Counted from the stretch's first letter, positions 50,290 to 63,946 are shown. The stretch is DNA of 64,000 nucleotides from IMGVR_UViG_3300030419_008158:220430-284429; one strand, 5' to 3'. Notes: a model not told the origin generated them from the sequence alone. Translations and numbers: made by a program.

Positions 50290-50607
50290 CTAAAACGTGT
50301 TGTACTTAGCATGCCCAAATACTTCGCCAGTATCCGGATCTTGATAAATTGTAACACCGCCCGGAAAACTTCCGCCAGACCACTGTTGAAATCTTTCAAC
50401 TGTCTCTTCGGGAGACTCGCCCGGCTTTGACGACCAAATTTCATGCGTATCGGCGTAATATTTTCCGGCAAGTCTTTTTTTAAGATCGCTTACTTTGGCT
50501 TGAATGTCTGCTTTGAGAGCATAATTTACCTTGCTGCCTCTGATCGTTTGCTCTTTGTCGATCTGTTCCCTTATGAGGTCTCGGATCTGCTTCCTGGTTA
50601 TCTTCAT
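50290..50607 (-). CDS. Class B leader cargo protein
   Basis: MKITRKQIRDLIREQ. Confidence 0.75.
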   Translation of the reverse strand: MKITRKQIRDLIREQIDKEQTIRGSKVNYALKADIQAKVSDLKKRLAGKYYADTHEIWSSKPGESPEETVERFQQWSGGSFPGGVTIYQDPDTGEVFGHAKYNTF

Positions 50608-51173
50608 CCTCTCATCTCCCTTGCAGTTGATAATTGTTCTCCGGACTCTTCTGCCCCTTCAACATCTCCCTTATCAAGAGCTTTTTGACGTTGTGCTGAC
50701 AAGGACTTGACATTTTGGGCAGTCGCTTGCTGTGTCGCTGGTGTAGAATCACCCATATCGACATCTAGGCCCATGGTTCCCACTGTCTCGTAACCGCTTT
50801 CGTCGTCGGTGTCATCTTTTTTTTCTGGTGGAGTGTATCCAACAACCTGCTCTTTCAAAGACTCCCTAATAATTCTTCTAAGCTGCTTTCTTGTAATTTT
50901 CACTTTAGATATTTCCTCTATTTCGACAACTAAGTTTTTCTGGCCCTTTATGATTCTGTGATAAGTATTTTTTGGAATAAAGTAAGTTTCGCCAGGAATC
51001 ATTCTCCGCGGAATGTTGTTTTCTAGCTGCAGCTGCCAACCATCTCCATGGCAGACTTTAACATTTCGGTCCGATCGGTCCCTATGCCAGACCAACTCGT
51101 CAGAGTCGACATCGGCACTAAACTCTCTCACTAGAAGACCTCTTTCTTTTTTTTGTTGAAAAGGATGCTTCAC
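50604..51173 (-). CDS. Cupin-like domain + internal class B leader + acidic domain
   Basis: VWHRD...IPKNTYHRIIKG; IEE|ISKVKITRKQLRRIIRESLKE. Confidence 0.7.
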   Translation of the reverse strand: MKHPFQQKKERGLLVREFSADVDSDELVWHRDRSDRNVKVCHGDGWQLQLENNIPRRMIPGETYFIPKNTYHRIIKGQKNLVVEIEEISKVKITRKQLRRIIRESLKEQVVGYTPPEKKDDTDDESGYETVGTMGLDVDMGDSTPATQQATAQNVKSLSAQRQKALDKGDVEGAEESGEQLSTAREMRG

Positions 51174-51907
51174 TACCACCACCCTGCAATATCTCTTCCA
51201 AAAAACTTTGTAGCGCGACATGACCAGTACCCTGGTTTTGTTTTATCTTTTTTATCAGAACAGTTGTGACGATCACCAAAGCTTTTCCTGCGCTTTTTGT
51301 GTGCAGGGCTATCGCCCATGGCATCAGGCATTGAAGAACCGAATGGGACTTTTTTCACTCTTATGGTGCCGTCCTTGTTCTTTTTTCCGGAATTTACATA
51401 GACATACGCTTTGCCGCCCTCGCCTCCGCGCTTTGGCTTGTTGAGCTCAACCTTCTTACCTTTGTACTCTGCTTCGTTTATGTGCTCTTCGTTTCCTTCC
51501 ATGATTGGATAGTCTAAAGGGACAAGTTGGCCTTCGTATATTGCAAACTCACCGATGTCTAAATCTTCGAGAAGTTCGTACTCTTCTAAAGATTTCGGAT
51601 CATATGTCCCCTCATAAAAACGTTGGCGTGCCTCTCTAAACAGAGCAAAGAACTTTGTAGATCCAGGACGAAATATGTTTTGATCCACGCCCACACCTGC
51701 ATCTAGGTGATAAAGGATTGCTTCTTCTAGCGTTTCTTTATCATCCTCGTTAATCTTTTCGCAGTTAGGGACCCTCTTTCCGCCTTTGCCTTTTTTGGTT
51801 TTCTTTCCAGACTGTGCTCCCGGACTATAGCCAGCCCAACAGGTGTTCTCCACTTCTTCCAGGGTCTCCCGAATTAAAATTCGAAGCTGTGTTTCTGAAA
51901 TTTGCAT
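51173..51907 (-). CDS. Leader-bearing multi-module basic protein
   Basis: MQISETQLRILIRE; modules bounded by INE|; CWAGY..VPNC; RHNC..GYWSC. Confidence 0.75.
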   Translation of the reverse strand: MQISETQLRILIRETLEEVENTCWAGYSPGAQSGKKTKKGKGGKRVPNCEKINEDDKETLEEAILYHLDAGVGVDQNIFRPGSTKFFALFREARQRFYEGTYDPKSLEEYELLEDLDIGEFAIYEGQLVPLDYPIMEGNEEHINEAEYKGKKVELNKPKRGGEGGKAYVYVNSGKKNKDGTIRVKKVPFGSSMPDAMGDSPAHKKRRKSFGDRHNCSDKKDKTKPGYWSCRATKFFGRDIAGWW

Positions 51908-51926
51908 TACTTCTTCTTTTTAGCTT

Positions 51927-52388
51927 TTAGTTATTTTCATTTGGGAGCTCTTTAACAACTTTTTTCAATTCATAAAATGACATACTGAGATTGATGCCAT
52001 CAGAGCTTGTTTTGTCTGTCTTTAAAAGAGAGCCCTCTATTTCAAAACCATCAGAGCTTTGATATTCAACATACATTAACATAAGCAGACGTGCTGCTGT
52101 TAAGTTTTTTTCAGAGGCGTCTCCGGGCCAAATAACGACAAGCAAATCAGGGACATTCATGCAGTTTTTGTGCCGCATTACTTGTGCCGGAATTGGAAAT
52201 CTAAAAGGTGGTACTGTGTAAAACTCTTCAGGCTCGCTACACTTCTCTGCTAAGTTTTGTGCAGAAACATGGTCATGTTGTTGCTTCTTGATAACTTTAG
52301 TGGCTCCGCCGCATCCTGAACAGCTTGCAGCAAACATGAGAAGCACTCCCAAGAATATAAGTACAGTATTTTTTGCCTTTTTTATCAC
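51927..52388 (-). CDS. Lipoprotein-like protein
   Basis: Hydrophobic N-terminus ending AASC. Confidence 0.65.
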   Translation of the reverse strand: MIKKAKNTVLIFLGVLLMFAASCSGCGGATKVIKKQQHDHVSAQNLAEKCSEPEEFYTVPPFRFPIPAQVMRHKNCMNVPDLLVVIWPGDASEKNLTAARLLMLMYVEYQSSDGFEIEGSLLKTDKTSSDGINLSMSFYELKKVVKELPNENN

Positions 52389-53119
52389 GTGTAGTCTCCA
52401 TTTATAAGCTTGTCAGTAAACTCTTCCATGGTTTTGTAAGCTAGTTGTCGAACTCGACGAGTCAACTCATTCTCTAAATCAATAGCTGCATCATCGACCT
52501 GTGCTTTCCATACAGACTTTGCCTCAGCGGCTGTCTCGCCCATGGCCATCATGGAGGGATCGCCCTTGTCAAAAGCTTTGACTTCTGCATCGTGCCACTT
52601 GTCAACTAGTTCACCCACATCAGACCAGTCAACCCTAGGCCAGTGATGCCCATTTCTTCCAAGGCCAGCAGCTTCATCCTGCTCTGCAAGATTTTCTTTC
52701 TCTTCTCTAATGATTCGCCTAAGTTGACGTTTTGTAATTTTCATTGTACTTCCTTTGTATTTTCTTTCGTTTACAGGTGTTTTCTTGTCTTGAACGCCGT
52801 GACCTGCTGTGATTGGGTGTTCTCCTTCTCGGACGGATTCAAGTAGACCCACTGGGATGTTTGTCTCAACTGACCCATCTGACCACTTGATATCGTACAC
52901 CTCAATCTTTCCGTTTTTGTCCAACGAGTGCCACATTACCTTACCAATCTCTTCTAGAGCGGAATCCTTCCGCTTAACGTGAGTCAGTCACGTATGACCA
53001 ATGATGTCCTTTTCATCACTATCTAAATCTTTAACAGGCTCGAGCCCTGAACCGAAAGGCACAGACTTTTCTGCCTCTTCTCTAATCAGTCTTGCAAGTT
53101 GTTTCTTTGTAATTTTCAT
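52385..53119 (-). CDS. Candidate selenoprotein: class B leader, in-frame TGA (codon 44), His-rich domain, second leader, third module
   Basis: ATG 53119 MKITKKQLARLIREE...IIGHT-TGA(52990-52988)-LTHVK... in frame with the track ORF 52385..52936. Confidence 0.7.
52954..52977 (-). promoter_or_regulatory. Bacterial SECIS-like hairpin
   Basis: TTA-AGCGGAA-GGA-TTCCGCT-C-TAG; loop 20 nt 3' of UGA, starting with G. Confidence 0.65.
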
Positions 53120-53120
53120 C

Positions 53121-53897
53121 TTAATATCTTCCTCCGCGGTCAGCTGGGTGTACCCAGCTAGGATCTACTTCACCGTTTCCGAATAGTTTCGGACGATGAG
53201 CATCTATAGCAATAGAGTATTCGTCATTGCCCCAATCACGCAGAGTTTTGTCTTTGCGTGGGTCGTATCCATCGTCTCCCGGATACTGCCAATTTCCACT
53301 TTCAGGATCTTTGTGTCCCGGACGGCTTTCGGCGAGCAAAGCTTCACGGATCACTCGTCTTAGTTGCTTCTTGGAAACTTTTACTCTTTTGCCTTCTTGA
53401 AATCCGTCGACTGTTCTGGCATCATACTTTGACTTTAACCAGCTAGCTAGCTTTTCATTAATGTCTGGAATGTCATCCTCATCTGACAATCCTTCTAGAG
53501 AATCGAGAGCGACGTTAAGAAAGTTATCCTCGACCGTGTCATCCACAATAGCAGCGACTTCGTCATCGACGTTTAGTTTGTCAAGCATCGTATCAGTCTT
53601 CTTATCATCAGGAGCAGAATACATACTCTTTAACGTCTGTGCTAGAGACAAAGCAGTGCCAGCGCCTGGAACGATATCAGCCAAAGCCCCTATTCCGAGA
53701 TCCTTTAACCCTTCGATACCCAACTTCGCTCTTTTTTCGCTCTGTAGCGTCTTAATTATTTTTCGAAGATCCCCGACCTTTCTGATCTGAGGGTCTACAT
53801 CCATCTCGTCAGCTAAGCGCTCCCAGTTGATTTCGTTGAGGAAACGTGCCTTCTCTTCTCTGATGATTCGTCTTAGTTGTCTTTTTGTTACTTTCAC
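53121..53897 (-). CDS. Class B leader cargo polyprotein (two leaders)
   Basis: VKVTKRQLRRIIREE...FLNE; FQE|GKRVKVSKKQLRRVIRE; middle domain paralogous to the C-domain of 3128..4345. Confidence 0.75.
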   Translation of the reverse strand: MKVTKRQLRRIIREEKARFLNEINWERLADEMDVDPQIRKVGDLRKIIKTLQSEKRAKLGIEGLKDLGIGALADIVPGAGTALSLAQTLKSMYSAPDDKKTDTMLDKLNVDDEVAAIVDDTVEDNFLNVALDSLEGLSDEDDIPDINEKLASWLKSKYDARTVDGFQEGKRVKVSKKQLRRVIREALLAESRPGHKDPESGNWQYPGDDGYDPRKDKTLRDWGNDEYSIAIDAHRPKLFGNGEVDPSWVHPADRGGRY

Positions 53898-54601
53898 TAC
53901 CAGCTTCCTCCCTCGGATTTCGCATGATTGAAGCCCATAGACCACCACTCGTAATTTTCGTCCTCTGGCATTGTATCATAGCCAGCGCCTCCATGGCTGC
54001 CAGCCTCATAGCCCACATCAAACCAGGCTTGTTGGTTTTTGGTCAAGCCTCTCTTGGGATTATCACCATAATAAGATCCATACTCTTTGAGTGCATTACC
54101 CATAATTGCCATGGCAAATTTACGCGTTGCCAGCGACTCAAAGGGCACTATAGATTCAAGTAGCCTTGACTTTTCTTCTTTGATGATTCTTCTTAGCTGC
54201 TTCTTGGTAATCTTTATTTTTGATTCTCCCATCATAACAGCTCTTTCTGCTTGTTGCACTTTGATTTCATGGCTAATATCTGAAACCCTCAGACCAAATG
54301 CGTCAGCTATCATAACCTTGTATGCTTCTCGCTTTGGGTCCTCTACGATATAAGATGCCACAACGGAGGAAGCTGATGGCGTTATGTGTCCGTTCTCTTC
54401 TGCCCACGCTACATAGTCATCGACGGGATCAAACCCACCGTCGTCCTGAACTCCCCCTATAGGCGCGTCGCCGGTTGGGTTATCACGATATCGCTCGTAG
54501 TCTCCAGGAACAGTTGGGTCGTAAGGTCGTCCACCATACTCCTCGAGCCTGGCTTTCTCTTCTCTAATGATTCTTCTTAGCTGCTTCTTAGTAATCTTCA
54601 T
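53897..54601 (-). CDS. Class B leader cargo polyprotein (two leaders)
   Basis: MKITKKQLRRIIREE; MGE|SKIKITKKQLRRIIKEE. Confidence 0.75.
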   Translation of the reverse strand: MKITKKQLRRIIREEKARLEEYGGRPYDPTVPGDYERYRDNPTGDAPIGGVQDDGGFDPVDDYVAWAEENGHITPSASSVVASYIVEDPKREAYKVMIADAFGLRVSDISHEIKVQQAERAVMMGESKIKITKKQLRRIIKEEKSRLLESIVPFESLATRKFAMAIMGNALKEYGSYYGDNPKRGLTKNQQAWFDVGYEAGSHGGAGYDTMPEDENYEWWSMGFNHAKSEGGSW

Positions 54602-54974
54602 TTTCACCTCTTATCCAGGCACCTATCTCATAGGGAATCTGTTCACGAACCAGTGTGTCTAGACGTTGATATTTGTCTATTAGTTTGCGACTTGGCTTGC
54701 CCACAGCAGACATGTCATGAAGTGCTGCACTGAAAACCGCCTCTAAATCTCTAGCATCGGCCTCGTACCCATCATCAAGGAACATCTCAATCGCATATTG
54801 CATCTCATCAATGGCTGACTCACTGAATTCGCCATCATCTTCTACGCTGCTCAACCTAGCATCGGTATCTGGAAAGTATGTCTGCTTTATCTTGCCAGGT
54901 GCGCGTAACATCGGTGCTTCGCGGAGAAGTTCTTCTTTGATGATTCTTCTAAGCTGTCTCTTTGTGACTTTCAT
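54588..54974 (-). CDS. Class B leader cargo protein
   Basis: MKVTKRQLRRIIKEELLRE. Confidence 0.75.
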   Translation of the reverse strand: MKVTKRQLRRIIKEELLREAPMLRAPGKIKQTYFPDTDARLSSVEDDGEFSESAIDEMQYAIEMFLDDGYEADARDLEAVFSAALHDMSAVGKPSRKLIDKYQRLDTLVREQIPYEIGAWIRGENEDY

Positions 54975-55303
54975 GATCTGTCCTTGTGATTTGGGTTGAT
55001 GACGCCCGTGTAGATTATAAGGGCGCCCATGCCCGCTTTGTGGATTTCGGCGCCCATCATGCGCTCAGCTTCCGCAGCGATATCCGGATCGTTTGTAAAG
55101 AAAATTAGTTCGCCACTGGGTTCATACTCACCATGTAGATGATTGTGTTCAGCCCAATCCATCCATTGTTGTTCTGAAGTGGCTTGGCGTGAAGAAGGAG
55201 ACGCACCTAGTTTGTGACCGCCTACCGATGCTGCTCCATGGCCGGTGTAGCCCTTAACGATCTCAGATATAATGCCCCTAAGTTGTCGCTTCGTGATTTT
55301 CAT
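54971..55303 (-). CDS. Class B leader cargo protein
   Basis: MKITKRQLRGIISE. Confidence 0.75.
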   Translation of the reverse strand: MKITKRQLRGIISEIVKGYTGHGAASVGGHKLGASPSSRQATSEQQWMDWAEHNHLHGEYEPSGELIFFTNDPDIAAEAERMMGAEIHKAGMGALIIYTGVINPNHKDRS

Positions 55304-55569
55304 TCTGTATATTCCGGATGCTCTAAGGCTTCGATCGCTGCTATCACTGCGTTCATAGATTCCTTATTGCCTGTGTTTCTCGCTAAAATAGAAAGCGCTT
55401 TCTTTAGGTGCGGAAGCGCCTCCGCCGGGTCGTGCCCACCAAAAAAACCCTCGGTGTCCAGCCTGGCTAGCCGCCTAGCTTCATCACGCTCGGCAGGTGT
55501 TACTTCAGAAAGCAACCTGGACCTCTCTTCTTTGATGATTCTTCTAAGACGACTTTTTGAAATTTTCAT
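55300..55569 (-). CDS. Class B leader cargo protein
   Basis: MKISKSRLRRIIKEERSRLLSE. Confidence 0.75.
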   Translation of the reverse strand: MKISKSRLRRIIKEERSRLLSEVTPAERDEARRLARLDTEGFFGGHDPAEALPHLKKALSILARNTGNKESMNAVIAAIEALEHPEYTE

Positions 55570-55580
55570 TTTAGATGTCC

Positions 55581-55871
55581 CTAGTCCAAATCAGCTAACA
55601 TGTATCGATACCCTATACTGTCCAAGAATTCACCAAAAACTTCAGTAACAGCGGCTACAGCCATTTCTTCAGCCTCTTCTTCCATAAGACCTTCTTCAGC
55701 TATGAAGTCATTAACAGCGTTTGTGTATAGATGCGTCATTAATGTTTTAGATCTTTCAGCCATGTTGTTGTCTATAAGCCCTCGTCCTCTCTCGCCGAGC
55801 GTCATCTCACTAAGGAGGCTGGCCTTCTCTTCTTTGATGATTCTTCGCAGTTGTCGTTTGGTAATTTTCAT
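55581..55871 (-). CDS. Class B leader cargo protein
   Basis: MKITKRQLRRIIKEEKASLLSE. Confidence 0.75.
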   Translation of the reverse strand: MKITKRQLRRIIKEEKASLLSEMTLGERGRGLIDNNMAERSKTLMTHLYTNAVNDFIAEEGLMEEEAEEMAVAAVTEVFGEFLDSIGYRYMLADLD

Positions 55872-56071
55872 TTTTCTAGCCTCTTGACACGTTTCAAAAG
55901 TTTCTGGATCCTAATCTCAAGTCCCTTATTTCTCTTCTCCACGGATTCAACTTGCTGCTCAAGAGCGTTGAGCCTGTACTCAGTTCCGTAGTAGAAGCCA
56001 CCGAAAGTGACTGCCAACCCACCGAGAAGGACCAACATCTTAAGATCAAGTTTCATCATGGACATACCCAC
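55868..56071 (-). CDS. Small TM + coiled-coil protein
   Basis: TM helix then heptad repeat; no leader. Confidence 0.6.
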   Translation of the reverse strand: MGMSMMKLDLKMLVLLGGLAVTFGGFYYGTEYRLNALEQQVESVEKRNKGLEIRIQKLLKRVKRLEK

Positions 56072-56484
56072 TTAGCCATCCTTTGTTGCCAGTATGGCTC
56101 AACAGTCTTTCCTGTTCTTCGATCTTTGCAACCCATTTCCTCGCCGGTAGGCTTTTTGTCTGCCCTGCTGGTGTCTACCCGACCTGAAGTGTCTATACCG
56201 GGCGTCCAGTACTCCTCGAGATCATCTTCTTTAAGCAGCGGCGCTGTATGAGCTAGATCATCAATTAGGCCTTCGTAGTCTTGAACGACAGCAAAATGGC
56301 CTAGGTCATCCATAAAGTCATCGTACAGTAGATTTTTAATCGCGCCGGCGTCGCCCATGGAGGCCAGAGCGGGATCAGAATGATAAGAAGCTGCTCTATC
56401 TGTTAGATATCTTACAACTTCTTCATGAGAAGCTGTAGCAGCTTCGCGAATGATTCTTCTAAGCTGTCTCTTTGTAATTCTCAT
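56056..56484 (-). CDS. Class B leader cargo protein
   Basis: MRITKRQLRRIIRE at ATG 56484; GATATTTA motif at 56512. Confidence 0.75.
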   Translation of the reverse strand: MRITKRQLRRIIREAATASHEEVVRYLTDRAASYHSDPALASMGDAGAIKNLLYDDFMDDLGHFAVVQDYEGLIDDLAHTAPLLKEDDLEEYWTPGIDTSGRVDTSRADKKPTGEEMGCKDRRTGKTVEPYWQQRMAKWVCP

Positions 56485-56510
56485 ATACACTCCTTTGGGC
56501 ACACTCAACA

Positions 56511-57548
56511 CTAAATATCATCATGTCTGGCATTATGATTGGTCATTCTTTCTAAAACATTTTCTACGATTCGTGCCTCATAAATCTTCTCTCTCTTGAA
56601 CTGTTTTAGATTTTTTCTAATTTTTCTCTGGAGCTTTTTTGTAAACTTTTCTTCTGGGTACTCTTCGTAATACTCTTTAAAATTGTCAGCGACCCCTACG
56701 GACTTCGCTATTTTCTGCATTTTATCAATATCTTGAGATTCTACTGCTTCTAGAGCGCTATCTATGCCGTATGTCTGTGCCAACCGCTCAGCAAACTCAT
56801 GCCCAAAAGCATCAATTTCAATATGTGATCCCAAATAATCTCTTCTGGGTGCTCCTTCGAGTGGAATAAGGCCCCAATCTTCAAGTTTCTTTTTTGCTTC
56901 CCCGCGGGAAACTCCCATGTCCCTGGAGATTGATGTGTACTGTCGATCATGCATAAGCTCATGTCGGATAGTTGCTGATATATCTTGGGCTATTTTGACA
57001 GGTTCAATTAGATTCTTGTCAAAGCTTTCATCAGCTGTTACTGCAAATAAAAGAAGAACGCCTCTGTCGCGGCCATCTAGGGCCATTTGTGCGCCGACAA
57101 CAAAGCGATTTGGGTTTGAATTATTTTGCAGCTTATTAGACCCACCTTTAATTCCTGTCTGGTCGATGCTTACGACATTAACTTCAATGGGAAGCCCTAT
57201 TTCTTTAAAGAATAAATCTAACGTGTCATCAAGTGACTCTGCTGCGTCTGTTTGCTCGACGGCGCCTAGAAATTTAGAGCTGTGAATCTCTGTGTATTCA
57301 TTATCCTCTAGATAAAACTTAGACGTCAACAGTGCATTTTCAATTCCACCATAAACATCGCGGCGGAGCGGAAGAGATTGTTCTCCTATTAAATGCATCT
57401 TCTTGTAATAGTCAGAAATTTTACGCAAAAACTTAGAGTCGTACTCATTTTCATTCCCTTCTCTGTCCAAAAACAGAGAGGTGGAACTTGCCTGGTCATA
57501 AGGCTGGTTCGAACGCATTTTATATTTTCTGCGATTGCTCTTTTTCAT
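56511..57548 (-). CDS. HExxH metallopeptidase-like protein
   Basis: IRHELMHDRQ...YL..HIEIDA, similar to 8613..9341. Confidence 0.6.
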   Translation of the reverse strand: MKKSNRRKYKMRSNQPYDQASSTSLFLDREGNENEYDSKFLRKISDYYKKMHLIGEQSLPLRRDVYGGIENALLTSKFYLEDNEYTEIHSSKFLGAVEQTDAAESLDDTLDLFFKEIGLPIEVNVVSIDQTGIKGGSNKLQNNSNPNRFVVGAQMALDGRDRGVLLLFAVTADESFDKNLIEPVKIAQDISATIRHELMHDRQYTSISRDMGVSRGEAKKKLEDWGLIPLEGAPRRDYLGSHIEIDAFGHEFAERLAQTYGIDSALEAVESQDIDKMQKIAKSVGVADNFKEYYEEYPEEKFTKKLQRKIRKNLKQFKREKIYEARIVENVLERMTNHNARHDDI

Positions 57549-57578
57549 AGATAGCTTTTAGAAGGTTCTTGGGTATTT

Positions 57579-57884: not shown

Positions 57885-57915
57885 TTGTCCCCTCCGTGCA
57901 TTGTGATTGTAAATA

Positions 57916-58854
57916 TCATGCTGCGGCTTGAAAATTCTTCTTTTCAAAGTCGAACAAGTACTTAAATACAGCTTTCTCTTTTGCTTTGGCTTCCATGGCA
58001 ACATCTACTGACTTGCCGCAAGAATTAAAGGGTTTATAATAGTAATCAGAATGTGCTGCTACAGACCTACACGTAGGATCTTCATACTTTTTCTTGCTGT
58101 TTGAGTGATGACACATTGGCCTTATACCAGCAGGCCATGTATCGTAAGCCATCAGAAATGCCTCTTCGTAAGATGTATCCTGGGGCCCGCATTCAAAATG
58201 ATGCGAATCAAAAACAATCGGCACACCCAGGCGTTTGTATACTGAGTCGTATAGCATTTTAGTTGAGTACAAATTTGGCCTGTCGTCATTTTCGACAGTA
58301 AGTCGACTGCGAACATTTTCAGGAAGTTTTTCAAAATTTCGACACCATGTGTCTAAAGCTTTTTCTCTATCACCATACGAAGCACCAATGTGAATGTTAA
58401 TCTTGGCATTGTGATTCATGGGCATGCCCATCATGTCCATCTGATCGCCGTGAATGCTTAGATCTTTTACACAATTTGAAACTACATACTCTTTGGGAGA
58501 TGCCAGGCAATTGAAAGGTCCCGGATGAAAAGAAAGACGCTGGCCTGTTTTATGAGCAAAGTCTCCGACCTTTCTTAAATTTTCTCTAATTTGCTCAATA
58601 TTGGGAAGCTGGTGCCACTCATATTCGCTAGCCCAAGGAAATAAATTAGATGTAATTCGAAAAACTTCAAAGCCGTTTGCAGAATTCCACTCTAAGATAC
58701 GCAGAAGGTCTTCTGTGTTATCAAGAGCAAGTTTTGAGGTGTAACCTAAGCCCTTAGCTTTAAATGTCTTCTGCCTCATTGTACGACTTGTAAAGACACC
58801 TTCATTTTTTTGAAGCTCAAGATTAATACAACAGTATCCAAATCGATTCGACAT
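57916..58854 (-). CDS. uvsE: UV damage endonuclease UvsE/UVDE
   Basis: FGYCCIN, FRITS.LFPW, SFHPG, NIHIG, VENDD, VFDSHH, AHSDY, MEAKAKE. Confidence 0.9.
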   Translation of the reverse strand: MSNRFGYCCINLELQKNEGVFTSRTMRQKTFKAKGLGYTSKLALDNTEDLLRILEWNSANGFEVFRITSNLFPWASEYEWHQLPNIEQIRENLRKVGDFAHKTGQRLSFHPGPFNCLASPKEYVVSNCVKDLSIHGDQMDMMGMPMNHNAKINIHIGASYGDREKALDTWCRNFEKLPENVRSRLTVENDDRPNLYSTKMLYDSVYKRLGVPIVFDSHHFECGPQDTSYEEAFLMAYDTWPAGIRPMCHHSNSKKKYEDPTCRSVAAHSDYYYKPFNSCGKSVDVAMEAKAKEKAVFKYLFDFEKKNFQAAA

Positions 58855-58935
58855 GTCCTTGCTCCTTGTAGGTACTTCAGAATTATATCATACTTAGTCT
58901 AAACAATACACAAAACTGGCAAAACAGACGAAGAA

Positions 58936-59205: not shown

Positions 59206-59323
59206 GCTATTTTCTGCGTTTTTTGATCAAATTTGAAATAGCACAATAACACACAAAGTCAATGACAACTCCGAGCACTACACACCCAGCTAACACAGCT
59301 AATAATGACATATAATATTTTCT

Positions 59324-59944
59324 CTAGTCGTAGTACGAAGTTGTTCTCTTGACTGACTTGCGGCGCTTTCTCAAAGTTGCGCCGCCCTTCTCTAACACCT
59401 TGATAACCTTGTCGATAGTTGTTCCGGCCGCTTTTGCGCCCCTTTCGTCTACTACGAAGGTTGAATGACCTAAAGGCATTGTGCCCCACGGGGTTTCACT
59501 ATCTTCAATTTGGAAAGCTACAATCTTGCCACCCCTGCGAATAGGCTGGTAGGTCAAGTACGCTACCTCACGATCCTCGAGGCCGTCATCTATTGCTTTG
59601 AGTTCTTTTATGTTGGGCGACTTAGAAATGTTTGCTTTTCGCTCGGTGTCTTGTGCATCGGTGATCGCATAGCTGATAAGTTCAAGATCCGGGTATGGTG
59701 TAACCCCTAAGTCTGCAAGTGTGCCCCTGTCGTCTTCGTAAAAAGCATCTGCCTGATCTAAACCGTACTCGTCAATAAAAACCTGCGCAACTTTTTTGTG
59801 GTCAGCATTGCTCATTTTTGAAGGGTCTTTCGGGAGCGCAGCAACAAGCTTTTTCTCCCATGCATCCATCTCAGCCTGGCGTTCTTTCCAGGATTTTACT
59901 TGTTCTTTGATGATTCTTCTTAGATGGTTCTTAGTAACTCTCAT
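59324..59944 (-). CDS. Class B leader cargo protein
   Basis: MRVTKNHLRRIIKEQ. Confidence 0.75.
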   Translation of the reverse strand: MRVTKNHLRRIIKEQVKSWKERQAEMDAWEKKLVAALPKDPSKMSNADHKKVAQVFIDEYGLDQADAFYEDDRGTLADLGVTPYPDLELISYAITDAQDTERKANISKSPNIKELKAIDDGLEDREVAYLTYQPIRRGGKIVAFQIEDSETPWGTMPLGHSTFVVDERGAKAAGTTIDKVIKVLEKGGATLRKRRKSVKRTTSYYD

Positions 59945-60215
59945 AATCTAACACCCTCAAAACTTCTCGATGATCATCGTCAGTAATGTCATTTTTAGAC
60001 AGCTCTTCGATTATTGCTCTAATAACTGATCTTGCACCCAGCTTTCTAATTGCACTAACATACGCATCCTCAACGTCGATCTGCTTGAATTCTTCTCTTG
60101 GTTGGAATTTACCTCCACCTATAGCACCCATGATATCAGGTATGTCGGGCTGTTCCATAAGCTTAGCCTTCTCTTCTTTGATGATTCTTCTTAGTTGTCT
60201 TTTTGTGATTTTCAT
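59931..60215 (-). CDS. Class B leader cargo protein
   Basis: MKITKRQLRRIIKEEKAKLME. Confidence 0.75.
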   Translation of the reverse strand: MKITKRQLRRIIKEEKAKLMEQPDIPDIMGAIGGGKFQPREEFKQIDVEDAYVSAIRKLGARSVIRAIIEELSKNDITDDDHREVLRVLDYESY

Positions 60216-60589
60216 TAGAATCTCCACCCTGCGTCTGGTGACCATGATACTGGTATCTCAACATAGCCACTCGCCATTTGCTTTTCTATCTTGTCAATCA
60301 TAGCGTCACCAAGAGCACCAGGAACCCTTTGGCCGGATGCGATGTAAAGTGCGCTAGGCACAAAGTCAAGCTCTGTCTCGCCTCCACTCACTAGAAGGGA
60401 ATCGCCAGTGGGGCTCAATGTTATCGTGGTCTTGTAGCCCCGCTTCGAAGTTTGCTGGCTCCTTCCGAGGTACTTGTTTCCTGCCGCGGCAGGTTGTGCT
60501 TCAAACGAATCACCAGGTATCATACGGATGGGCTCATCATCCATGGCTTCTATAATGATTCTTCTAAGTTGTCTTTTTGTGATTTTCAT
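60215..60589 (-). CDS. Class B leader cargo protein
   Basis: MKITKRQLRRIIIE. Confidence 0.75.
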   Translation of the reverse strand: MKITKRQLRRIIIEAMDDEPIRMIPGDSFEAQPAAAGNKYLGRSQQTSKRGYKTTITLSPTGDSLLVSGGETELDFVPSALYIASGQRVPGALGDAMIDKIEKQMASGYVEIPVSWSPDAGWRF

Positions 60590-60915
60590 TAGTATCTCCC
60601 CGGGGCTCTGTAGCTTGACTTCTGCTTAGAATACAGGTCGTGAATCTGTTGATATACGTCAAGAGGCCAGTTGATTGCCTGACCGCTGTCATCTCGGTAT
60701 CCACCGCTGTGAATCTCGACCTCTTCTTTCATGTCAGCAGCATCACCTTCGAATTCGTAGAACGCTGTAGACAAAGCATCTGTGACACCGCCGTAAGATC
60801 TGGTTACGCCGAGCTTCTTAAGCATTGTCTTGAGACCACGTGGGTCGACACCTTCGTTCAACAGACTGATTTCTTCCTTGATGATTCTTCTTAGTTGTCT
60901 TTCTGTGATTTTCAT
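60589..60915 (-). CDS. Class B leader cargo protein
   Basis: MKITERQLRRIIKEEISLLNE. Confidence 0.75.
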   Translation of the reverse strand: MKITERQLRRIIKEEISLLNEGVDPRGLKTMLKKLGVTRSYGGVTDALSTAFYEFEGDAADMKEEVEIHSGGYRDDSGQAINWPLDVYQQIHDLYSKQKSSYRAPGRY

Positions 60916-60920
60916 AGTTT

Positions 60921-61142
60921 TTACCTTTTCGTGCCTTCTATTTCATCAGCAATATCTCGAAGTGCACTAGCTTTTTCATTCGAACGTCTAAGTCCGTAGT
61001 GTGCTAATAAAATAAAAATAGCCTTAGTAAGACCAAGCGTCAGCAATGAAGACAAATCTTCTTTCAGCAGTGTATCTGGCATTTGTTTGTCTTTGACACT
61101 TTCTGCAATAATTTTTCTCAGCTGTGATCTAGTAATCTTCAC
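60921..61142 (-). CDS. Class B leader cargo protein
   Basis: GTG 61142 VKITRSQLRKIIAE. Confidence 0.7.
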   Translation of the reverse strand: MKITRSQLRKIIAESVKDKQMPDTLLKEDLSSLLTLGLTKAIFILLAHYGLRRSNEKASALRDIADEIEGTKR

Positions 61143-61350
61143 CGACACCCCTTTTATTTTCAGCAAACGGAACAAACTCTCCTTTGCAATTGTAAATTCC
61201 CCACTTCTTGCTGTAGACTTTCTTGATAATTCTATTCAGCTTTTTCGCTGACAAGCTGTTCTTTTTAGATGCTTTTTGTTTGGGATCAATTCCTGCCCAC
61301 TTGTAATGTTCCGCTGGAATATTGATCGGAGATATCTTTTCAACTTTCAC
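61129..61350 (-). CDS. Small basic protein with degenerate internal leader
   Basis: LSAKKLNRIIKK. Confidence 0.55.
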   Translation of the reverse strand: MKVEKISPINIPAEHYKWAGIDPKQKASKKNSLSAKKLNRIIKKVYSKKWGIYNCKGEFVPFAENKRGVGEDY

Positions 61351-61589
61351 TTAGCAGCCTCATCTTTAGATTTTTTACTCCATTCCTCCTCAGGTAGAAA
61401 CTTCTCTATCTTAAACTTGAGAATGGACTTTCCGTTGATTGTAGGATGACCATCATCGTCTTCTCCTATTTTATTCACGATTGTTCGCTTGTTTTTGAAC
61501 TTACCTGTCAAAATGACATCTCCCTTCTCGATATTGAGAATGATGGCTTCTCTGATGATTCTCCTTAGATGTCGTTTTGTGATTTTCAA
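61347..61589 (-). CDS. Class B leader cargo protein
   Basis: MKITKRHLRRIIRE. Confidence 0.75.
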   Translation of the reverse strand: MKITKRHLRRIIREAIILNIEKGDVILTGKFKNKRTIVNKIGEDDDGHPTINGKSILKFKIEKFLPEEEWSKKSKDEAAK

Positions 61590-61590
61590 T

Positions 61591-61743
61591 TTACTCTTCT
61601 TTGTTCCAAGATGCTTCGGGATCTTCCATCATGTCAATCATGCTCTTTTCGAATCCTCTGGCAGCTATCCATGCACCCAGAATCATTCCAGTACCAATAC
61701 ACCCTATGAACAACAAGCCGACAAAAATTGAATCCCACGTCAT
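61591..61743 (-). CDS. Small single-TM protein (50 aa)
   Basis: Below cutoff: MTWDSIFVGLLFIGCIGTGMILGAWIAARG... Confidence 0.55.
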   Translation of the reverse strand: MTWDSIFVGLLFIGCIGTGMILGAWIAARGFEKSMIDMMEDPEASWNKEE

Positions 61744-61810
61744 TTTTTATTGCCTTTTTTGCCCGGAAAGGGTGACAAACCCTTGAGAAGTGCCTGCCAA
61801 AACGTAATCA

Positions 61811-62152
61811 TCAATCCAAGCTCCACAACATTAAAGTGCCCGGGTCGTTCCACTCTGGAGCAAACCCATAATTGTCAATAACGAACGCCTCAAAATCAGG
61901 GTGTACACCAAATATATAGGGATCCGAGTTTATATAGTAATCAAAGAGAGGCAAGCCGTCCTCAGCCTCAGGAACATTGCTTTCAGCATCGAGCCACACT
62001 CCTCCGGGAGTACCGTCAAATTCTTCAGTGGTTCTCACCCTGAGTCCGTATTTAGACTCAAGGGCGTCCATGAGCTCGTCTCTTTTGTCAACAGACATGG
62101 ATTCCAGCTCTTCTTTAATAATTCGTCTAAGTTGTCGTTGTGTGATTTTCAT
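61811..62152 (-). CDS. Class B leader cargo protein
   Basis: MKITQRQLRRIIKEELE. Confidence 0.75.
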   Translation of the reverse strand: MKITQRQLRRIIKEELESMSVDKRDELMDALESKYGLRVRTTEEFDGTPGGVWLDAESNVPEAEDGLPLFDYYINSDPYIFGVHPDFEAFVIDNYGFAPEWNDPGTLMLWSLD

Positions 62153-62466
62153 CAAACACCTCGCTTCTTCATATCATGTGCCAAGTCTGACATTTCTTCA
62201 GCGGCATCCATCAAAAGCTCTTCTAGTTTATCATATCTGGAAGTGCCGAATTTGTTACCGTCATCAAGCCACTCCGGAGGTATAGATTTTATTTTTCGAT
62301 ATTCAAAGAACATTTTGTCCAGCGCTGATCTCATGGCTTCAACCCTGTCGACCTCACCCTGATTGAGAGTCTGCTGTCTAACATCTTCTCCAGCCCGAAT
62401 CTCATTTACAAGCTTACCCTTCTCTTCTTTAACAATTCTTCTAAGTTGTTTCTTTGTGATTTTCAT
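62152..62466 (-). CDS. Class B leader cargo protein
   Basis: MKITKKQLRRIVKEEKGKLVNE. Confidence 0.75.
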   Translation of the reverse strand: MKITKKQLRRIVKEEKGKLVNEIRAGEDVRQQTLNQGEVDRVEAMRSALDKMFFEYRKIKSIPPEWLDDGNKFGTSRYDKLEELLMDAAEEMSDLAHDMKKRGV

Positions 62467-62469
62467 AAA

Positions 62470-62733
62470 CTACCGGCCTTTCATAATATTATGCTTAGTT
62501 ATAAAGTCATTAGCCCAAGCAGCCAGGCTATCGCTATCAGAGAAGAAGTCTTCGCCCAGAGCTTCTACTTCAGCAGCTAAATTGAATAACTTGCCGGCGA
62601 TGCTTTGAGGAGTGATCACTTTGCCTTGGTGGGTGCGTTCGAGCGGCCCGGGATCTGATCCTTCCAGCGCTTCGTTAAGCTTCGCCTTCTCTTCTCTAAT
62701 GATTTGTCTAAGTTGTTTGTCTGTGATTCTCAC
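62470..62733 (-). CDS. Class B leader cargo protein
   Basis: VRITDKQLRQIIREEKAKLNE. Confidence 0.75.
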   Translation of the reverse strand: MRITDKQLRQIIREEKAKLNEALEGSDPGPLERTHQGKVITPQSIAGKLFNLAAEVEALGEDFFSDSDSLAAWANDFITKHNIMKGR

Positions 62734-63413
62734 TTCTTTTTACCCTTCTTTTTCTTTTTCTTGGACTTTTTCACAACTGCCCAAGGCTTTGAAGGCGTCG
62801 CAGAATTAACTCTTGCATGTGCCCATTGGTGCTGTGACATACCTTTCCTGGAGCCAGATGAAGCCCAGGCTGCTAGACCTTTCTTGAACTCTGCATAGAC
62901 AGAACTTGGGGTGAGACCTCTCTTTTCTGCCTTCTTCTTTAGCGTCGCCTTGGTCTTTGCACTGAGCTCCTCGGAAAGAAGATTTCGAATCACTTCTCGG
63001 AGATCGGCCTCGGTCATTCTCATGTGGTGAGACTCTTTTTTAGTGTCTTTGCGAGGCTTGTTCTTAAATCCCTTTTTGGATCTTTCCTTCTTTTCCATTC
63101 TTTCTCGACGTCGATAAGCTCGAGCAATTCTCTCAGGATCTCCGCTTGCTAGGTCCTCTTTTGTTTTGTCTAGACCTTTGTCTCTTGGGCTGCCTTGTGG
63201 CGCACCGTACTGCTTTGGGTGTGGAGTATCAGATTCTTCCATACCGTGGTGAGCTTCTTTCTTACTCTTTTTGGATTTATTAATAATCCCTTTCTGAAGA
63301 TGGTCAGGTAGCTTATCTTGATCACCCTTTAGGGCTGGATCGTCGTCGTATTTTTCAGTAGACTTAGCTTCCTCTCTGATTATTCTTCTTAGTTTCTGCT
63401 TAGTCATTTTCAT
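62730..63413 (-). CDS. Class B leader polyprotein, very basic; C-module KGLAAW..SG.R......WA.ARVNS
   Basis: MKMTKQKLRRIIREE; KKE|SHHMRMTEADLREVIRNLLSEE. Confidence 0.75.
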   Translation of the reverse strand: MKMTKQKLRRIIREEAKSTEKYDDDPALKGDQDKLPDHLQKGIINKSKKSKKEAHHGMEESDTPHPKQYGAPQGSPRDKGLDKTKEDLASGDPERIARAYRRRERMEKKERSKKGFKNKPRKDTKKESHHMRMTEADLREVIRNLLSEELSAKTKATLKKKAEKRGLTPSSVYAEFKKGLAAWASSGSRKGMSQHQWAHARVNSATPSKPWAVVKKSKKKKKKGKKK

Positions 63414-63414
63414 C

Positions 63415-63690
63415 TTATTTTCCTTGCCTATACGCTTTATCTGCCTGGGAACCGACAGGAGCCATAAGTTTCTTTAATTGGTTAGAAAAAGAAAAGAAAG
63501 GATGACCGAACTCCTCGTATGCTGGATCACGTTCAGAGTACTTTACAATTTCTTCTGCAATCATTTGCGCTTTTTGAAGGTGATCAAGCATCAAATACAT
63601 CTCATCGAGAGGATTATATTCATATGCTTCTTGTAGCTTCGCCTTCTCTTCTTTGATGATTCTTTTTAGTTGTCTTTTGGTGATTCTCAT
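63415..63690 (-). CDS. Class B leader cargo protein
   Basis: MRITKRQLKRIIKEEKAKLQE. Confidence 0.75.
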   Translation of the reverse strand: MRITKRQLKRIIKEEKAKLQEAYEYNPLDEMYLMLDHLQKAQMIAEEIVKYSERDPAYEEFGHPFFSFSNQLKKLMAPVGSQADKAYRQGK

Positions 63691-63691
63691 C

Positions 63692-63946
63692 TTAGTAATC
63701 CTTTAGCGCCTTTATTTGTTTTTCTAGATCTTCTGCCGCACGAATAACCTCTGGCTTTTGATTTTGCTTGGCTTCAGTCCATATGTCCCACAGCGCAGAA
63801 GTAGCTTCAGAAATGGAATCAATTGCCCTTTGTAAGTGCTCCGAGCGATAAGCTGCACGTGCAAACATATGATCAGCCTGCTCATTGAGAAGCCTGGCCT
63901 TCTCTTCTTTGATGATTCTTCTTAATTGCCTTTTAGTAATCTTCAC
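63692..63946 (-). CDS. Class B leader cargo protein
   Basis: VKITKRQLRRIIKEEKARLLNE; GGAGG RBS. Confidence 0.75.
   Translation of the reverse strand: MKITKRQLRRIIKEEKARLLNEQADHMFARAAYRSEHLQRAIDSISEATSALWDIWTEAKQNQKPEVIRAAEDLEKQIKALKDY

What the first reader, a model, noticed from the sequence alone, without database searches (positions are those of the whole stretch)
50290..63946. Large leader-peptide cargo system: about 23 unrelated proteins share MKITKRQLRRIIKEE...L-x-E
Seen: 22 ORFs here plus 6142..6489 start with M-K/R-I/V-T/S-K-R/K-Q-L-R-R-I-I-K/R-E-(E). A second acidic site often follows (LLNE, LLSE, KLQE, KLME, LVNE), after which the sequences are unrelated. The genes are chained by ATGA/TAATG overlaps, and GATATTTA motifs (56512, 57910) lie upstream of two of them. 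Established: T4 internal proteins carry a short N-terminal capsid-targeting sequence that the gp21 prohead protease removes after Glu in (I/L)-x-E. Inference: this is a much larger analogous system, a portable packaging tag that loads dozens of diverse proteins into the head for maturation and ejection into the host. It could also serve as a tool for capsid loading.
Basis: partly seen in the sequence, partly recalled or inferred. Interest (0 to 1): 0.92.

Follow-up and report, generated by a model that had tools for sequence, protein, structure and literature searches.

The report
Shared leader tag on phage proteins
A marine giant phage puts the same 14-22-residue N-terminal tag (MKITKRQLRRIIKEE...) on at least 37 otherwise unrelated small proteins, most likely an address label that loads them into the virus particle and is then cut off, but loading and cutting are inferred, not shown.

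Summary
A profile of the motif finds 26 strong copies in the window, all on the minus strand: 25 at 50290-63946 and one at 6489. One degenerate copy lies at 51907. The window is the last 64 kb of a 284-kb marine myovirus contig. That genome holds a second array of nine, so at least 37 leader genes.

Selection acts on the peptide: codon positions 1+2 are 80% identical, position 3 is 52%, upstream DNA 30%. Glu14 is invariant. [LI]-x-E ends at residue 14 in 97% of copies and again at 21/22 in 48%. Conservation is gone by residue 23.

Cargoes are unrelated (401 fall into 173 BLAST families). One cargo is cleanly swapped between two leaders in population variants. About 5,000 protein clusters in public metagenomes carry the tag.

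In relatives with T4-type head genes, leader-like genes sit in the structural region. These relatives are the 484-kb phage LR756508 and the cultured Flavobacterium phage immuto.

The best reading is a T4-like capsid-targeting sequence on a much larger scale (confidence 0.5). Not shown: virion presence, cleavage, or a gp21-type protease in this genome, whose head module I did not reach. I rate it a new variant of a known kind.

The parts
59324..63946 (-). Upstream half of leader array 1. Twelve leader genes: 63692-63946 (GTG start), 63415-63690, 62730-63413 (227 aa, very basic, DUF5824), 62470-62733 (GTG), 62152-62466, 61811-62152, 61347-61589 (TTG), 60921-61142 (GTG), 60589-60915, 60215-60589, 59931-60215, 59324-59944. 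Two small non-leader ORFs are interspersed: 61591-61743 and 61129-61350.
   Evidence: HMM hits E 7e-5 to 2.5e-12; codon view; junctions; Pfam DUF5824
50290..56484 (-). Downstream half of leader array 1. Leader genes: 56056-56484, 55581-55871, 55300-55569, 54971-55303, 54588-54974, 53897-54601 (second, internal leader at 54217, ATA codon), 53121-53897 (second, internal leader at 53384, GTA codon), 52988-53119, 52385-52744 (open frame continues upstream to 52936), 51173-51907 (degenerate leader MQISETQLRILIRE), 50604-50903 (leader internal to 50604-51221, after a WHRD cupin-like N-domain), 50290-50607. Non-leader genes: 55868-56071 (membrane-like) and 51927-52388 (lipoprotein-like).
6142..6489 (-). 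Isolated leader gene (115 aa, basic cargo). It lies inside an operon of unannotated 177-437-aa proteins that includes a radical SAM/LAM-like gene (7303-8616).
   Evidence: HMM E 1.6e-7; Pfam; no PHROG hits for neighbours; syntenic homologue at 88% nucleotide identity in L056
56511..57548 (-). 345-aa protein embedded in the array, with invariant RHExxHxxQY and GHEF motifs. Function unknown. It recurs near leader arrays in three related contigs.
   Evidence: AF2 pLDDT 79; no significant Foldseek match in PDB, only uncharacterised viral proteins in BFVD
57916..58854 (-). UV damage endonuclease UvdE, a non-leader gene inside the array
   Evidence: Pfam PF03851 E 2.4e-53
56512..56519 (-). GATATTTA promoter-like motif, 28-35 nt upstream of the ATG of leader gene 56484. 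The same motif lies at 57910-57917, 45338-45345 (tail sheath), 11217-11224, 9713-9720, 36132-36139 and 46838-46845.
41970..45314 (-). Tail sheath (1114 aa; C-terminal third is T4 gp18-like). It is the only recognisable virion gene in the window, lies 5 kb downstream of the array on the same strand, and is preceded by the GATATTTA motif.

Best explanation
The motif is a portable N-terminal address tag. It is a basic amphipathic helix, M-K-I-T-K-R-Q-L-R-R-I-I-K-E, often extended by E-K-A-R-L-L-x-E. Gene cassettes acquire it by recombination within the leader-coding DNA.

The most likely destination is the assembling virion, specifically the prohead core, as with the capsid-targeting sequence of T4 internal proteins. 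The tag would dock the cargo to a scaffold or core component during head assembly. The head maturation protease would then cut after the invariant Glu14 (I-x-E) and, in about half of the proteins, again after Glu21/22 (L-x-E). The mature, mostly acidic cargo of 60-200 aa would stay in the head and enter the host with the DNA, plausibly as a fast-evolving set of counter-defence or host-takeover proteins.

Shown:
- the tag, its peptide-level conservation and its sharp boundary;
- the unrelated cargoes and the cassette exchange;
- its spread in a clade of marine giant myoviruses;
- its association with virion gene regions in relatives.

Inferred: docking to the prohead, cleavage, packaging, ejection, and what the cargoes do.
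For: 1. Peptide-level selection. 32% of pairwise codon comparisons in the leader are synonymous differences. Identity is 0.80 at codon positions 1+2, 0.52 at position 3 and 0.30 in the 30 nt upstream.

2. Sharp boundary. Positions 1-14 carry 2.8-4.4 bits each and Glu14 is 100% conserved. [LI]-x-E ends at residue 14 in 97% and at 21/22 in 48%. Information is about zero from residue 23.

3. Same end pattern as T4 propeptides read from NC_000866. ipII and ipIII share MKTYQEFIAE|A. gp22 starts MLKEQLIAE, gp24 starts MAKINELLRE, and gp23 has LTE65|A. T4 cleavage after Glu and CTS propeptides of 10-20 residues are described in PMC5694885.

4. Tag-like modularity.
- 401 cargoes fall into 173 families.
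- The phrog_7595 domain occurs with the leader in window 51173, L030 and L119, and without it in L101, L149, L091 and immuto gp099.
- Two population variants are identical through one leader, unalignable over the cargo (84 aa versus 76 aa), and identical again from the next leader.
- PMC3012670 describes the same situation for T-even internal proteins: diverse proteins that share only a conserved CTS.

5. Virion-region association in relatives.
- In LR756508, 12 of 13 leader-like N-termini lie between 143.6 and 219.9 kb. That span holds terminase, portal, a gp21-type protease (phrog_207, E 1.8e-49), the Gp23-like capsid protein and the sheaths. Three of the copies lie between protease and capsid protein. 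Its capsid protein has L-K-E|A aligned to the T4 gp23 cleavage site.
- In cultured phage immuto, gp072 (MKKSQIVKAVQEVLEE, 73 aa) lies between portal gp074 and prohead protease gp070, where T4 has core proteins gp67/gp68.
- In the L009-type lineage the array lies between tail tube and baseplate hub.

6. Likely co-regulation with a virion gene. The same GATATTTA motif precedes the sheath gene, leader gene 56484 and the operon that opens array 1. It is nearly absent from the replication module.

7. Internal copies in fusion proteins stay fully conserved. A docking and cleavage site tolerates an internal position; a signal that needs a free N-terminus would not.
Against: - There is no proteomic or expression evidence of any kind.
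- No gp21-type protease, portal, scaffold or capsid gene was found in the roughly 140 kb of this genome that I could read (contig 1-57 kb, about 165-187 kb and 200-284 kb). The proteases seen are two ClpP-family genes and one trypsin-like gene. One ClpP-family gene hits PHROG head maturation protease families, and the cleavage specificity of that kind need not be I-x-E.
- No sequence homology to the T4 CTS or to T4 core proteins: the best HMM hit in the T4 head region has E 1.8.
- In about 480 kb around leader arrays from about 45 contigs, no T4 head gene lies within reach; only sheath and tube do.
- 85% of cargoes are acidic (median pI 4.7), whereas classical DNA-associated internal proteins are basic.
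- AlphaFold places the leader as a confident helix (residues 5-22, pLDDT about 91) in an all-helical model of one cargo family. I could not check whether it packs against the cargo.
- The leader-like motifs of LR756508 and immuto are divergent, and each has a weak E-value on its own.
Confidence: 0.5

Rival explanations
1. Uncleaved docking or oligomerisation helix. The conserved amphipathic helix stays on the protein and attaches many different small domains to one common hub. The hub could be a virion surface or tail component, a phage assembly factor, or a host machine such as RNA polymerase or the ribosome. No proteolysis or packaging inside the head is involved.
For: - High-confidence helix at residues 5-22 in the AF2 model.
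- Invariant polar residues Thr4 and Gln7 suggest a specific partner.
- Arrays lie next to tail genes (sheath, tube, baseplate hub), not head genes, in this genome and in the L009 lineage.
- Internal copies are tolerated.
Against: - The invariant Glu14 preceded by Ile12, plus a second L-x-E in half of the copies, is more specific than a docking helix needs and matches propeptide ends in T4.
- In LR756508 and immuto, leader-like genes sit among prohead genes.
- No candidate hub was identified.
Confidence: 0.2
2. Sorting or turnover signal for intracellular host-takeover proteins. The arrays would be hyperplastic regions of small host-takeover or counter-defence genes. The tag would then be an N-terminal degron or chaperone-recognition signal, for example for the phage's ClpP-family proteases or its Cpn60, that sets their lifetime or folding.
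For: - The genes are small, tightly chained, fast-turning-over and without known domains.
- The genome encodes two ClpP homologues, a trypsin-like protease, Cpn60, Hsp20 and peptide deformylase.
- A sigma-70-family gene and Cpn60 lie just upstream of array 1.
Against: - Internal copies keep full conservation, which a signal needing a free N-terminus would not.
- The arrays share a promoter-like motif with the tail sheath gene and lie outside the replication module.
- Leader-like genes in relatives sit in virion modules.
- There is no direct link between the tag and ClpP or Cpn60.
Confidence: 0.1
3. Ordinary paralogous family. The N-terminal helix would be the conserved part of one ancestral small protein, for example a nucleic-acid-binding helix, and the C-terminal parts have diverged beyond recognition.
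For: - Tandem arrays are typical of duplication.
- The helix is basic (net charge about +4).
- One weak cargo similarity exists, 6489 with 59944.
Against: - The phrog_7595 and DUF5824 domains, and the WHRD cupin-like domain that precedes an internal leader in 50604-51221, occur independently of the leader in other phages.
- Cargo lengths run from 20 to 350 aa with different predicted compositions.
- A cassette swap has its breakpoints inside the leaders.
- The conservation boundary is a step, not a gradient.
Confidence: 0.1
4. RiPP-type precursor peptides. A conserved leader would be recognised by a modifying enzyme (radical SAM genes are present in the window) and removed by a leader peptidase, as in multi-precursor lanthipeptide systems of marine cyanobacteria.
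For: - Many precursors share one leader.
- Two radical SAM genes are present (24389-26035 and 7303-8616). The second is two genes from the isolated leader gene 6142-6489.
- An HExxH protein is embedded in the array.
Against: - The geometry is the reverse of RiPPs: the leader is 14-22 aa and the 'core' is 60-350 aa of predicted folded protein.
- No Cys/Ser/Thr-rich cores are seen.
- The arrays are not adjacent to the radical SAM genes.
- The HExxH protein has no detectable peptidase fold.
Confidence: 0.03

Closest known systems
Capsid-targeting sequence (CTS) of phage T4 internal proteins IPI/IPII/IPIII and Alt, removed by the gp21 prohead protease
   Same: - A short N-terminal leader shared by otherwise unrelated proteins.
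- It starts M-K and ends I-x-E.
- The genes lie in hypervariable loci outside the head module.
- The cargo is exchanged behind a constant leader.
- T-even internal proteins are described as diverse defence proteins that share only the CTS (PMC3012670; T4 sequences).
   Different: - 14-22 residues and strongly basic, against 10 residues and acidic.
- No detectable sequence homology.
- At least 37 genes per genome in two arrays, where T4 has only a few such proteins (IPs and Alt).
- Frequent multi-leader fusion proteins.
- Cargoes are mostly acidic.
- Packaging and cleavage are untested here, and the protease of this genome is unidentified.
Propeptides of inner-body and ejection proteins of giant phages phiKZ, 201phi2-1 and SPN3US
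   Same: A giant myovirus with many head-internal proteins that are processed after Glu by a gp21-related protease. Paralogues can share identical N-termini, as SPN3US gp53 and gp54 do (PMC5694885).
   Different: In those phages most propeptides are longer than 100 residues, are not one shared sequence, and the cleavage motif is A/S/G-x-E. Here there is a single short leader with I-x-E. This phage has a bacterial-type Pol III alpha and a sigma factor; no phiKZ-type virion RNA polymerase was found in the parts of the genome read.
N-terminal packing signals of cargo proteins of extracellular contractile injection systems (PVC-type)
   Same: An N-terminal tag that loads diverse payloads into a contractile-tail particle. 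In one lineage here the arrays lie inside the tail gene block, between tube and baseplate hub.
   Different: From my own knowledge, those signals are about 50 residues long, disordered, and load the tube lumen of a headless particle. No sequence comparison was made here. A phage tube lumen is normally occupied by the tape-measure protein.
Multi-precursor RiPP systems with one conserved leader (prochlorosin type)
   Same: Dozens of genes share a leader with hypervariable remainders, in marine microbes.
   Different: The size relation is reversed (short leader, long folded cargo). No modifying enzyme is adjacent to the arrays. The context is a phage virion-region.

Membership tests
T4-type capsid-targeting sequence / internal proteins | Short (10-20 aa) N-terminal leader shared by otherwise unrelated proteins | tested here: met
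   26 copies in the window and at least 37 in the genome. 383 further copies in the fetched IMG/VR loci: of 382 with a readable first residue, 346 start with M and 24 (6%) have more than 60 aa of open frame upstream. Cargoes are unrelated.
T4-type capsid-targeting sequence / internal proteins | Leader ends in the prohead-protease site (L/I)-x-Glu | tested here: met
   I-x-E ends at residue 14 in 97% of copies and Glu14 is 100% conserved. A second L-x-E ends at 21/22 in 48%, against a background of 1.2% per position. This tests the sequence pattern only, not cleavage.
T4-type capsid-targeting sequence / internal proteins | Sequence homology to the T4 CTS or T4 core proteins | tested here: not met
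   The leader HMM against the T4 head region gives a best hit of E 1.8 (gp67 TIDLIKEEK). ipII and ipIII share only M-K and I-x-E with the leader.
T4-type capsid-targeting sequence / internal proteins | gp21-type prohead protease and scaffold core encoded by the same genome | tested here: inconclusive
   Not found in the roughly 140 kb read; about 57-165 kb of the contig was not reached. A ClpP/NfeD-like gene hits PHROG head maturation protease families. gp21-type proteases are present in relatives LR756508 and immuto gp070.
T4-type capsid-targeting sequence / internal proteins | Cargo present in mature heads with the leader removed, and ejected with the DNA | not testable with these tools
   The phage is uncultured, and I found no virion proteome for any carrier.
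T4-type capsid-targeting sequence / internal proteins | Hypervariable locus with cargo exchange behind a constant leader | tested here: met
   Alignment A1 shows an 84-aa versus a 76-aa cargo between identical leaders. Only the closest 6 of 79 tube-family loci carry an array.
phiKZ/SPN3US-type inner-body propeptides | Long (over 100 aa) propeptides cleaved at A/S/G-x-E | tested here: not met
   The leader is 14-22 aa and P3 is Ile in 97% of copies. Family features taken from PMC5694885.
Sec/Tat/lipoprotein signal peptides | Hydrophobic core of 10 or more residues after a basic N-region | tested here: not met
   The leader is charged throughout (K2, K5, R6, R9, R10, K13, E14, E15) with no hydrophobic run. 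True lipoprotein-like and membrane-like ORFs in the array (51927-52388, 55868-56071) lack the leader.
RiPP precursor peptides | Long leader, short modified core, adjacent modifying enzyme | tested here: not met
   Cargo is 60-350 aa and folds with pLDDT 93 in the one family modelled. The radical SAM genes are not adjacent to the arrays.
DNA-level repeat (recombination or regulatory element) | Conservation at the nucleotide level irrespective of codon position | tested here: not met
   Identity is 0.52 at third codon positions, 0.80 at positions 1+2 and 0.30 upstream.

The most novel reading that the evidence does not exclude
The tag is a general protein-sorting signal of a globally distributed clade of marine giant phages. 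It would deliver dozens of different, rapidly exchanged effector proteins per genome, about 5,000 cargo clusters in all, to a destination that is not the T4-type prohead core. Candidates are the tail or baseplate interior, or an unknown phage-built structure in the infected cell. That would be a new kind of viral cargo-loading system, not an enlarged T4 CTS.
Probability: 0.15. Interest if true: 0.9.

Novelty: new variant of a known kind. Interest (0 to 1): 0.7.

Why it matters
If the tag is a packaging signal, these phages carry into each infection a set of several dozen pre-made proteins. That is many times the T4 set, and the proteins are exchanged as cassettes between strains. This would change how counter-defence in abundant ocean phages is viewed. 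It would also give a direct handle for finding injected effectors in metagenomes: search for the tag, which is already seen on about 5,000 protein clusters. The tag is short, sequence-defined and position-tolerant, so it could also serve as a loading tag for phage capsids. A cultured carrier of a related motif, Flavobacterium phage immuto, makes the idea testable with ordinary virion mass spectrometry.

Tried and rejected
- DNA-level repeat: rejected from codon-position statistics.
- T4 late promoter TATAAATA: 1 match against 2.1 expected. Generic sigma-70 promoter and terminator scans gave background counts.
- Known families: Pfam and PHROGs give nothing for the leader and almost nothing for cargoes.
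- The INPHARED phage collection has no DNA or protein match, except weak leader-like hits in LR756508.
- No paper contains the motif strings searched.
- HExxH protein as a dedicated leader peptidase: there are 36 homologues, all metagenomic and unannotated. The AF2 model has pLDDT 79. There is no PDB sequence match and no significant Foldseek match. It is left unresolved and is not used as evidence.
- Fold of one cargo family (AF2 pLDDT 93): no significant PDB match.
- Head module of this genome: I walked the contig with 11 of 12 look-ups. This gave the replication module, the second array and the start of a baseplate region (phrog_7145), but no portal, protease or capsid protein.
- A scan with the LR756508 capsid protein returned 80 loci, none from a leader-rich contig.
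- Bacterial genomes: 5 hits only, all on MAG contigs that look like misbinned phage, so no host clue.
- Phage-nucleus import signal: considered and set aside. The tubulin hit is weak (E 8e-5, below Pfam's cut-off), and the genome has a sigma factor and bacterial-type Pol III alpha, not the hallmarks of nucleus-forming phages. I ran no chimallin search.

Full report
**What is there**

The window is almost entirely coded on the minus strand. ORF listing and a loose pattern show 22 ORF-initial copies of M-K-I-T-K-R-Q-L-R-R-I-I-K-E-E. An HMM built from them finds 26 copies at E between 7e-5 and 1e-12. These are 25 between 50607 and 63946 plus 6489, with a degenerate copy at 51907 and nothing comparable in the other five frames.

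Two ORFs hold two copies each. Four copies are internal to longer open frames, and two of those begin with GTA or ATA, so they are not translation starts. Genes are chained: 22 of 31 junctions are overlaps or gaps of 5 nt or less. Non-leader genes interrupt the array:
- UvdE, 57916-58854;
- a 345-aa protein with an invariant HExxH, 56511-57548;
- a lipoprotein-like ORF and two small membrane-like ORFs.

**Genome context**

The window is the last 64,000 bases of JGI contig Ga0183741_1000001, which is IMGVR_UViG_3300030419_008158 (284,429 bp). Contig coordinate equals window coordinate plus 220,429.

The phage is a marine giant myovirus:
- Its tail sheath is distantly T4-like.
- The window also carries PEPCK, two radical SAM genes, a weak tubulin/FtsZ hit, RNA ligase, Hsp20, peptide deformylase, thymidylate synthase, NUDIX and endolysin-like genes.
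- The rest of the genome that I could reach holds a sigma-70-family gene, Cpn60, Pol III alpha, Pol A, DnaB, RecA, topoisomerase II, ligase, RNR and two ClpP homologues.

The array continues one gene beyond the window end and then stops. A second array of nine consecutive leader genes lies about 85-100 kb away in the same genome. That gives at least 37 leader genes.

No leader copy occurs in the replication module. In the stretch at about 200-232 kb the only copy is the isolated gene at window 6489.

**Selection acts on the peptide**

Codon positions 1+2 are 80% identical among copies, position 3 is 52%, and the 30 nt upstream are 30%. A third of pairwise codon comparisons are synonymous differences.

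In 348 non-redundant copies, positions 1-14 are nearly invariant and Glu14 is 100% conserved. [LI]-x-E ends at residue 14 in 97% and again at 21/22 in 48% (background 1.2% per position). Information is about zero from residue 23. This set was collected with the motif itself, so the degree of conservation is inflated. The step-like boundary is not.

**The motif behaves as a portable tag**

- The 26 window cargoes show no mutual BLASTP similarity except one weak pair.
- 401 cargoes from about 45 contigs fall into 173 families, 107 of them singletons.
- The ten longest cargo representatives have no Pfam domain.
- One orthologous cargo family keeps the leader far better conserved than the cargo.
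- The phrog_7595 domain of 51173-51907 occurs with a leader in L030 and L119, and without one in L101, L149, L091 and the cultured phage immuto.

Most telling is the four-way DNA alignment. It compares the window and a Tara contig with the JGI contig start and an ENA 227-kb contig. The two variants are identical through the leader of gene 63946. They cannot be aligned over the cargo (84 aa versus 76 aa). They are identical again from the leader of the next gene. The two ends of the JGI contig overlap at this polymorphic cassette. That implies a circular or permuted genome whose assembly broke there. The ENA contig likewise starts and ends at leader copies.

**Spread**

- The exact pattern K-R-Q-L-R-R-I-I-K-E-E occurs in 71 stretches of about 45 IMG/VR contigs, many of them 170-293 kb.
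- The HMM finds 383 copies there. Of the 382 with a readable first residue, 346 begin with Met, and 6% have more than 60 aa of open frame upstream.
- A 30-column profile finds 4,979 cluster representatives at E of 1e-3 or better among 1.84 billion.
- The best-scoring hits hold 2-4 leaders in one ORF. Before internal copies, an in-frame reading of a Shine-Dalgarno-like sequence (E-G-K) is seen.
- Bacterial genomes give only five hits, on MAG contigs that look like misbinned phage.
- No cultured phage carries the exact motif, and no paper contains it.

**Link to virions**

This link is circumstantial.

(a) LR756508, a 484-kb uncultured phage, has 13 leader-like N-termini (for example MKIQEQKLRGIIKEE). 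Twelve lie between 143.6 and 219.9 kb. That span, 16% of the genome, holds terminase, portal, a gp21-type maturation protease (phrog_207), a Gp23-like capsid protein and the sheaths. One copy lies just before the protease and three lie between protease and capsid protein. Its capsid protein has L-K-E|A aligned to the T4 gp23 cleavage site L-T-E65|A.

(b) The cultured Flavobacterium phage immuto has a T4-type portal, prohead core serine protease and Gp23. Leader-like N-termini (MKKSQL..II.E) occur in gp080, gp094, gp095 and gp072. gp072 is a 73-aa protein between portal and protease, where T4 has core proteins gp67/gp68. Its gp099 and gp098 are homologues of window 51173-51907 and of the N-domain of 50604-51221, so the neighbourhood is syntenic.

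(c) In the L009-type lineage the array lies between the gp19-like tail tube and a gp26-like baseplate hub. It is present only in the closest 6 of 79 fetched members of a very abundant tube family, so it is accessory.

(d) In this genome a GATATTTA motif on the coding strand lies 23-35 nt upstream of the start codons of the sheath gene, of leader gene 56484 and of the 197-aa gene that opens the operon containing array 1. It is enriched in the window (8 against 2.7 expected) and nearly absent from about 37 kb of replication genes.

**Comparison with T4**

From NC_000866, ipII and ipIII share MKTYQEFIAE|A. gp22, gp24 and gp23 have I-A-E, L-R-E and L-T-E at their N-terminal sites. The literature describes CTS propeptides of 10-20 residues that bring internal proteins to the scaffolding core and are removed by gp21 after Glu. 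It also describes T-even internal proteins as diverse defence proteins that share only the CTS (PMC3012670; PMC5694885).

The present leader has the same logic and the same end pattern. It differs in four ways:
- it has no detectable homology to the T4 CTS;
- it is longer and basic;
- it is present on many times more genes than in T4;
- it is often found inside fusion proteins.

**What is missing**

I could not reach the head module of this genome; about 57-165 kb was not read. The proteases seen are two ClpP-family genes and a trypsin-like gene. One ClpP-family gene matches PHROG head-maturation-protease families (phrog_94, E 2e-38). A baseplate-wedge-like gene next to 1042-aa and 2313-aa ORFs suggests that the virion module begins just beyond the part I read.

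Cargoes are mostly acidic (median pI 4.7). AlphaFold gives one cargo family a confident all-helical model in which the leader is helix 5-22. I could not inspect whether it packs on the cargo. Foldseek finds no relative. The HExxH protein recurs near arrays in three relatives but has no recognisable fold.

**Verdict**

The portable-tag reading is well supported. Capsid targeting with cleavage after Glu14 and Glu21/22 is the best explanation (0.5), and it rests on pattern and neighbourhood, not on any direct evidence.

The rivals are:
- an uncleaved docking helix (0.2);
- an intracellular sorting or turnover signal (0.1);
- an ordinary diverged paralogue family (0.1);
- RiPP-type precursors (0.03).

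I file it as a new variant of a known kind. It works like the T4 CTS system. It is not a demonstrable member of that system by sequence.

Noticed in passing
window 45338-45345, 11217-11224, 9713-9720, 36132-36139, 46838-46845, 56512-56519, 57910-57917 (minus strand); L159 1050, 5253, 7097, 15875; L177 7172, 9964: GATATTTA on the coding strand lies 23-35 nt upstream of start codons. These include the tail sheath gene, the tubulin-like gene and the operon that opens leader array 1. It is enriched (8 against 2.7 expected) and nearly absent from the replication module. It is a candidate phage promoter class.
   Followed up: partly
window 63580-64000 versus L159 17000-17642 (contig start) and L158 (ENA 227-kb contig end): The two ends of the 284-kb contig overlap at 91-96% identity around a swapped cargo cassette. 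A second assembly of the same genome starts and ends at leader copies. The leader repeats and cassette polymorphism break assemblies and could create chimeric joins (for example L040).
   Followed up: partly
L177/L178 191-3593 (ENA contig about 39.7-43.1 kb; about 184-187 kb of the JGI contig): A second array of nine leader genes in the same genome. Several have an extended leader (…EEKAKVLAEQK[VI]RRIVRR…). Large unannotated proteins follow, one of which starts with a degenerate leader (MKKSDLRRIVRHVINED).
   Followed up: partly
L177 13503-14123, L177 12246-13034 (opposite strand), L173 9389-9991: Three protease genes. A ClpP/NfeD-like protein matches PHROG head maturation protease families (phrog_94, E 2e-38). 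There is also a Trypsin_2 protein and a second ClpP in the replication module. Which one, if any, matures the head is unknown.
   Followed up: no
window 56511-57548: A 345-aa protein with invariant RHExxHxxQY and GHEF motifs is embedded in the array and recurs near arrays in L011, L030 and L063. Two homologues are fused to DUF5824. It has no recognisable fold.
   Followed up: yes
window 50604-51221 and 51173-51907; immuto gp098/gp099 (L266 1270-2086); Melnitz genes 18/19 (L265 2573-4788): A conserved gene pair (phrog_7595-domain protein plus WHRD cupin-like protein) is found in cultured Flavobacterium, OM43 and SAR11 myophages. Here the cupin-like domain is fused in frame to an internal leader and an acidic tail. 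The fusion is also seen in L065.
   Followed up: partly
window 12768-14222, 24389-26035, 7303-8616, 10097-11185; L172-L178: A rich auxiliary gene set. It includes ATP-dependent PEP carboxykinase, a B12-binding radical SAM, a LAM-like radical SAM with Fe-S assembly genes (HesB/IscA, NifU), a weak tubulin/FtsZ-like gene, Fe-SOD, the PrkA-DUF444-SpoVR triad, MgtC, Cpn60, Hsp20, peptide deformylase and bacterial-type Pol III alpha.
   Followed up: no
L073 26480-29944 (LR756508 156.5-160 kb): The gp21-type protease gene of LR756508 is split by an insertion of more than 1 kb, is 574 aa long, and is followed by a large homing/HNH endonuclease gene. This suggests an intein or mobile insertion in the protease.
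   Followed up: no
L263 (T4 65.4-67.5 kb) versus window 57916-58854: In T4, ipII and ipIII lie next to denV (UV repair), e (lysozyme) and nudE. Here a UV endonuclease sits inside the leader array, and NUDIX and endolysin-like genes lie in the same 64 kb. This may be coincidence.
   Followed up: no
window about 36,060-36,075: A run of N (masked or unresolved bases) lies downstream of the GATATTTA site at 36132.
   Followed up: no
L258 (NHDW01000006.1, 305,838 bp, 'Methylococcaceae bacterium TMED69'), L259, L260, L262: MAG contigs labelled as bacteria carry the leader motif. They are probably misbinned giant-phage contigs. One has the same length (101,404 bp) as an IMG/VR viral contig.
   Followed up: no
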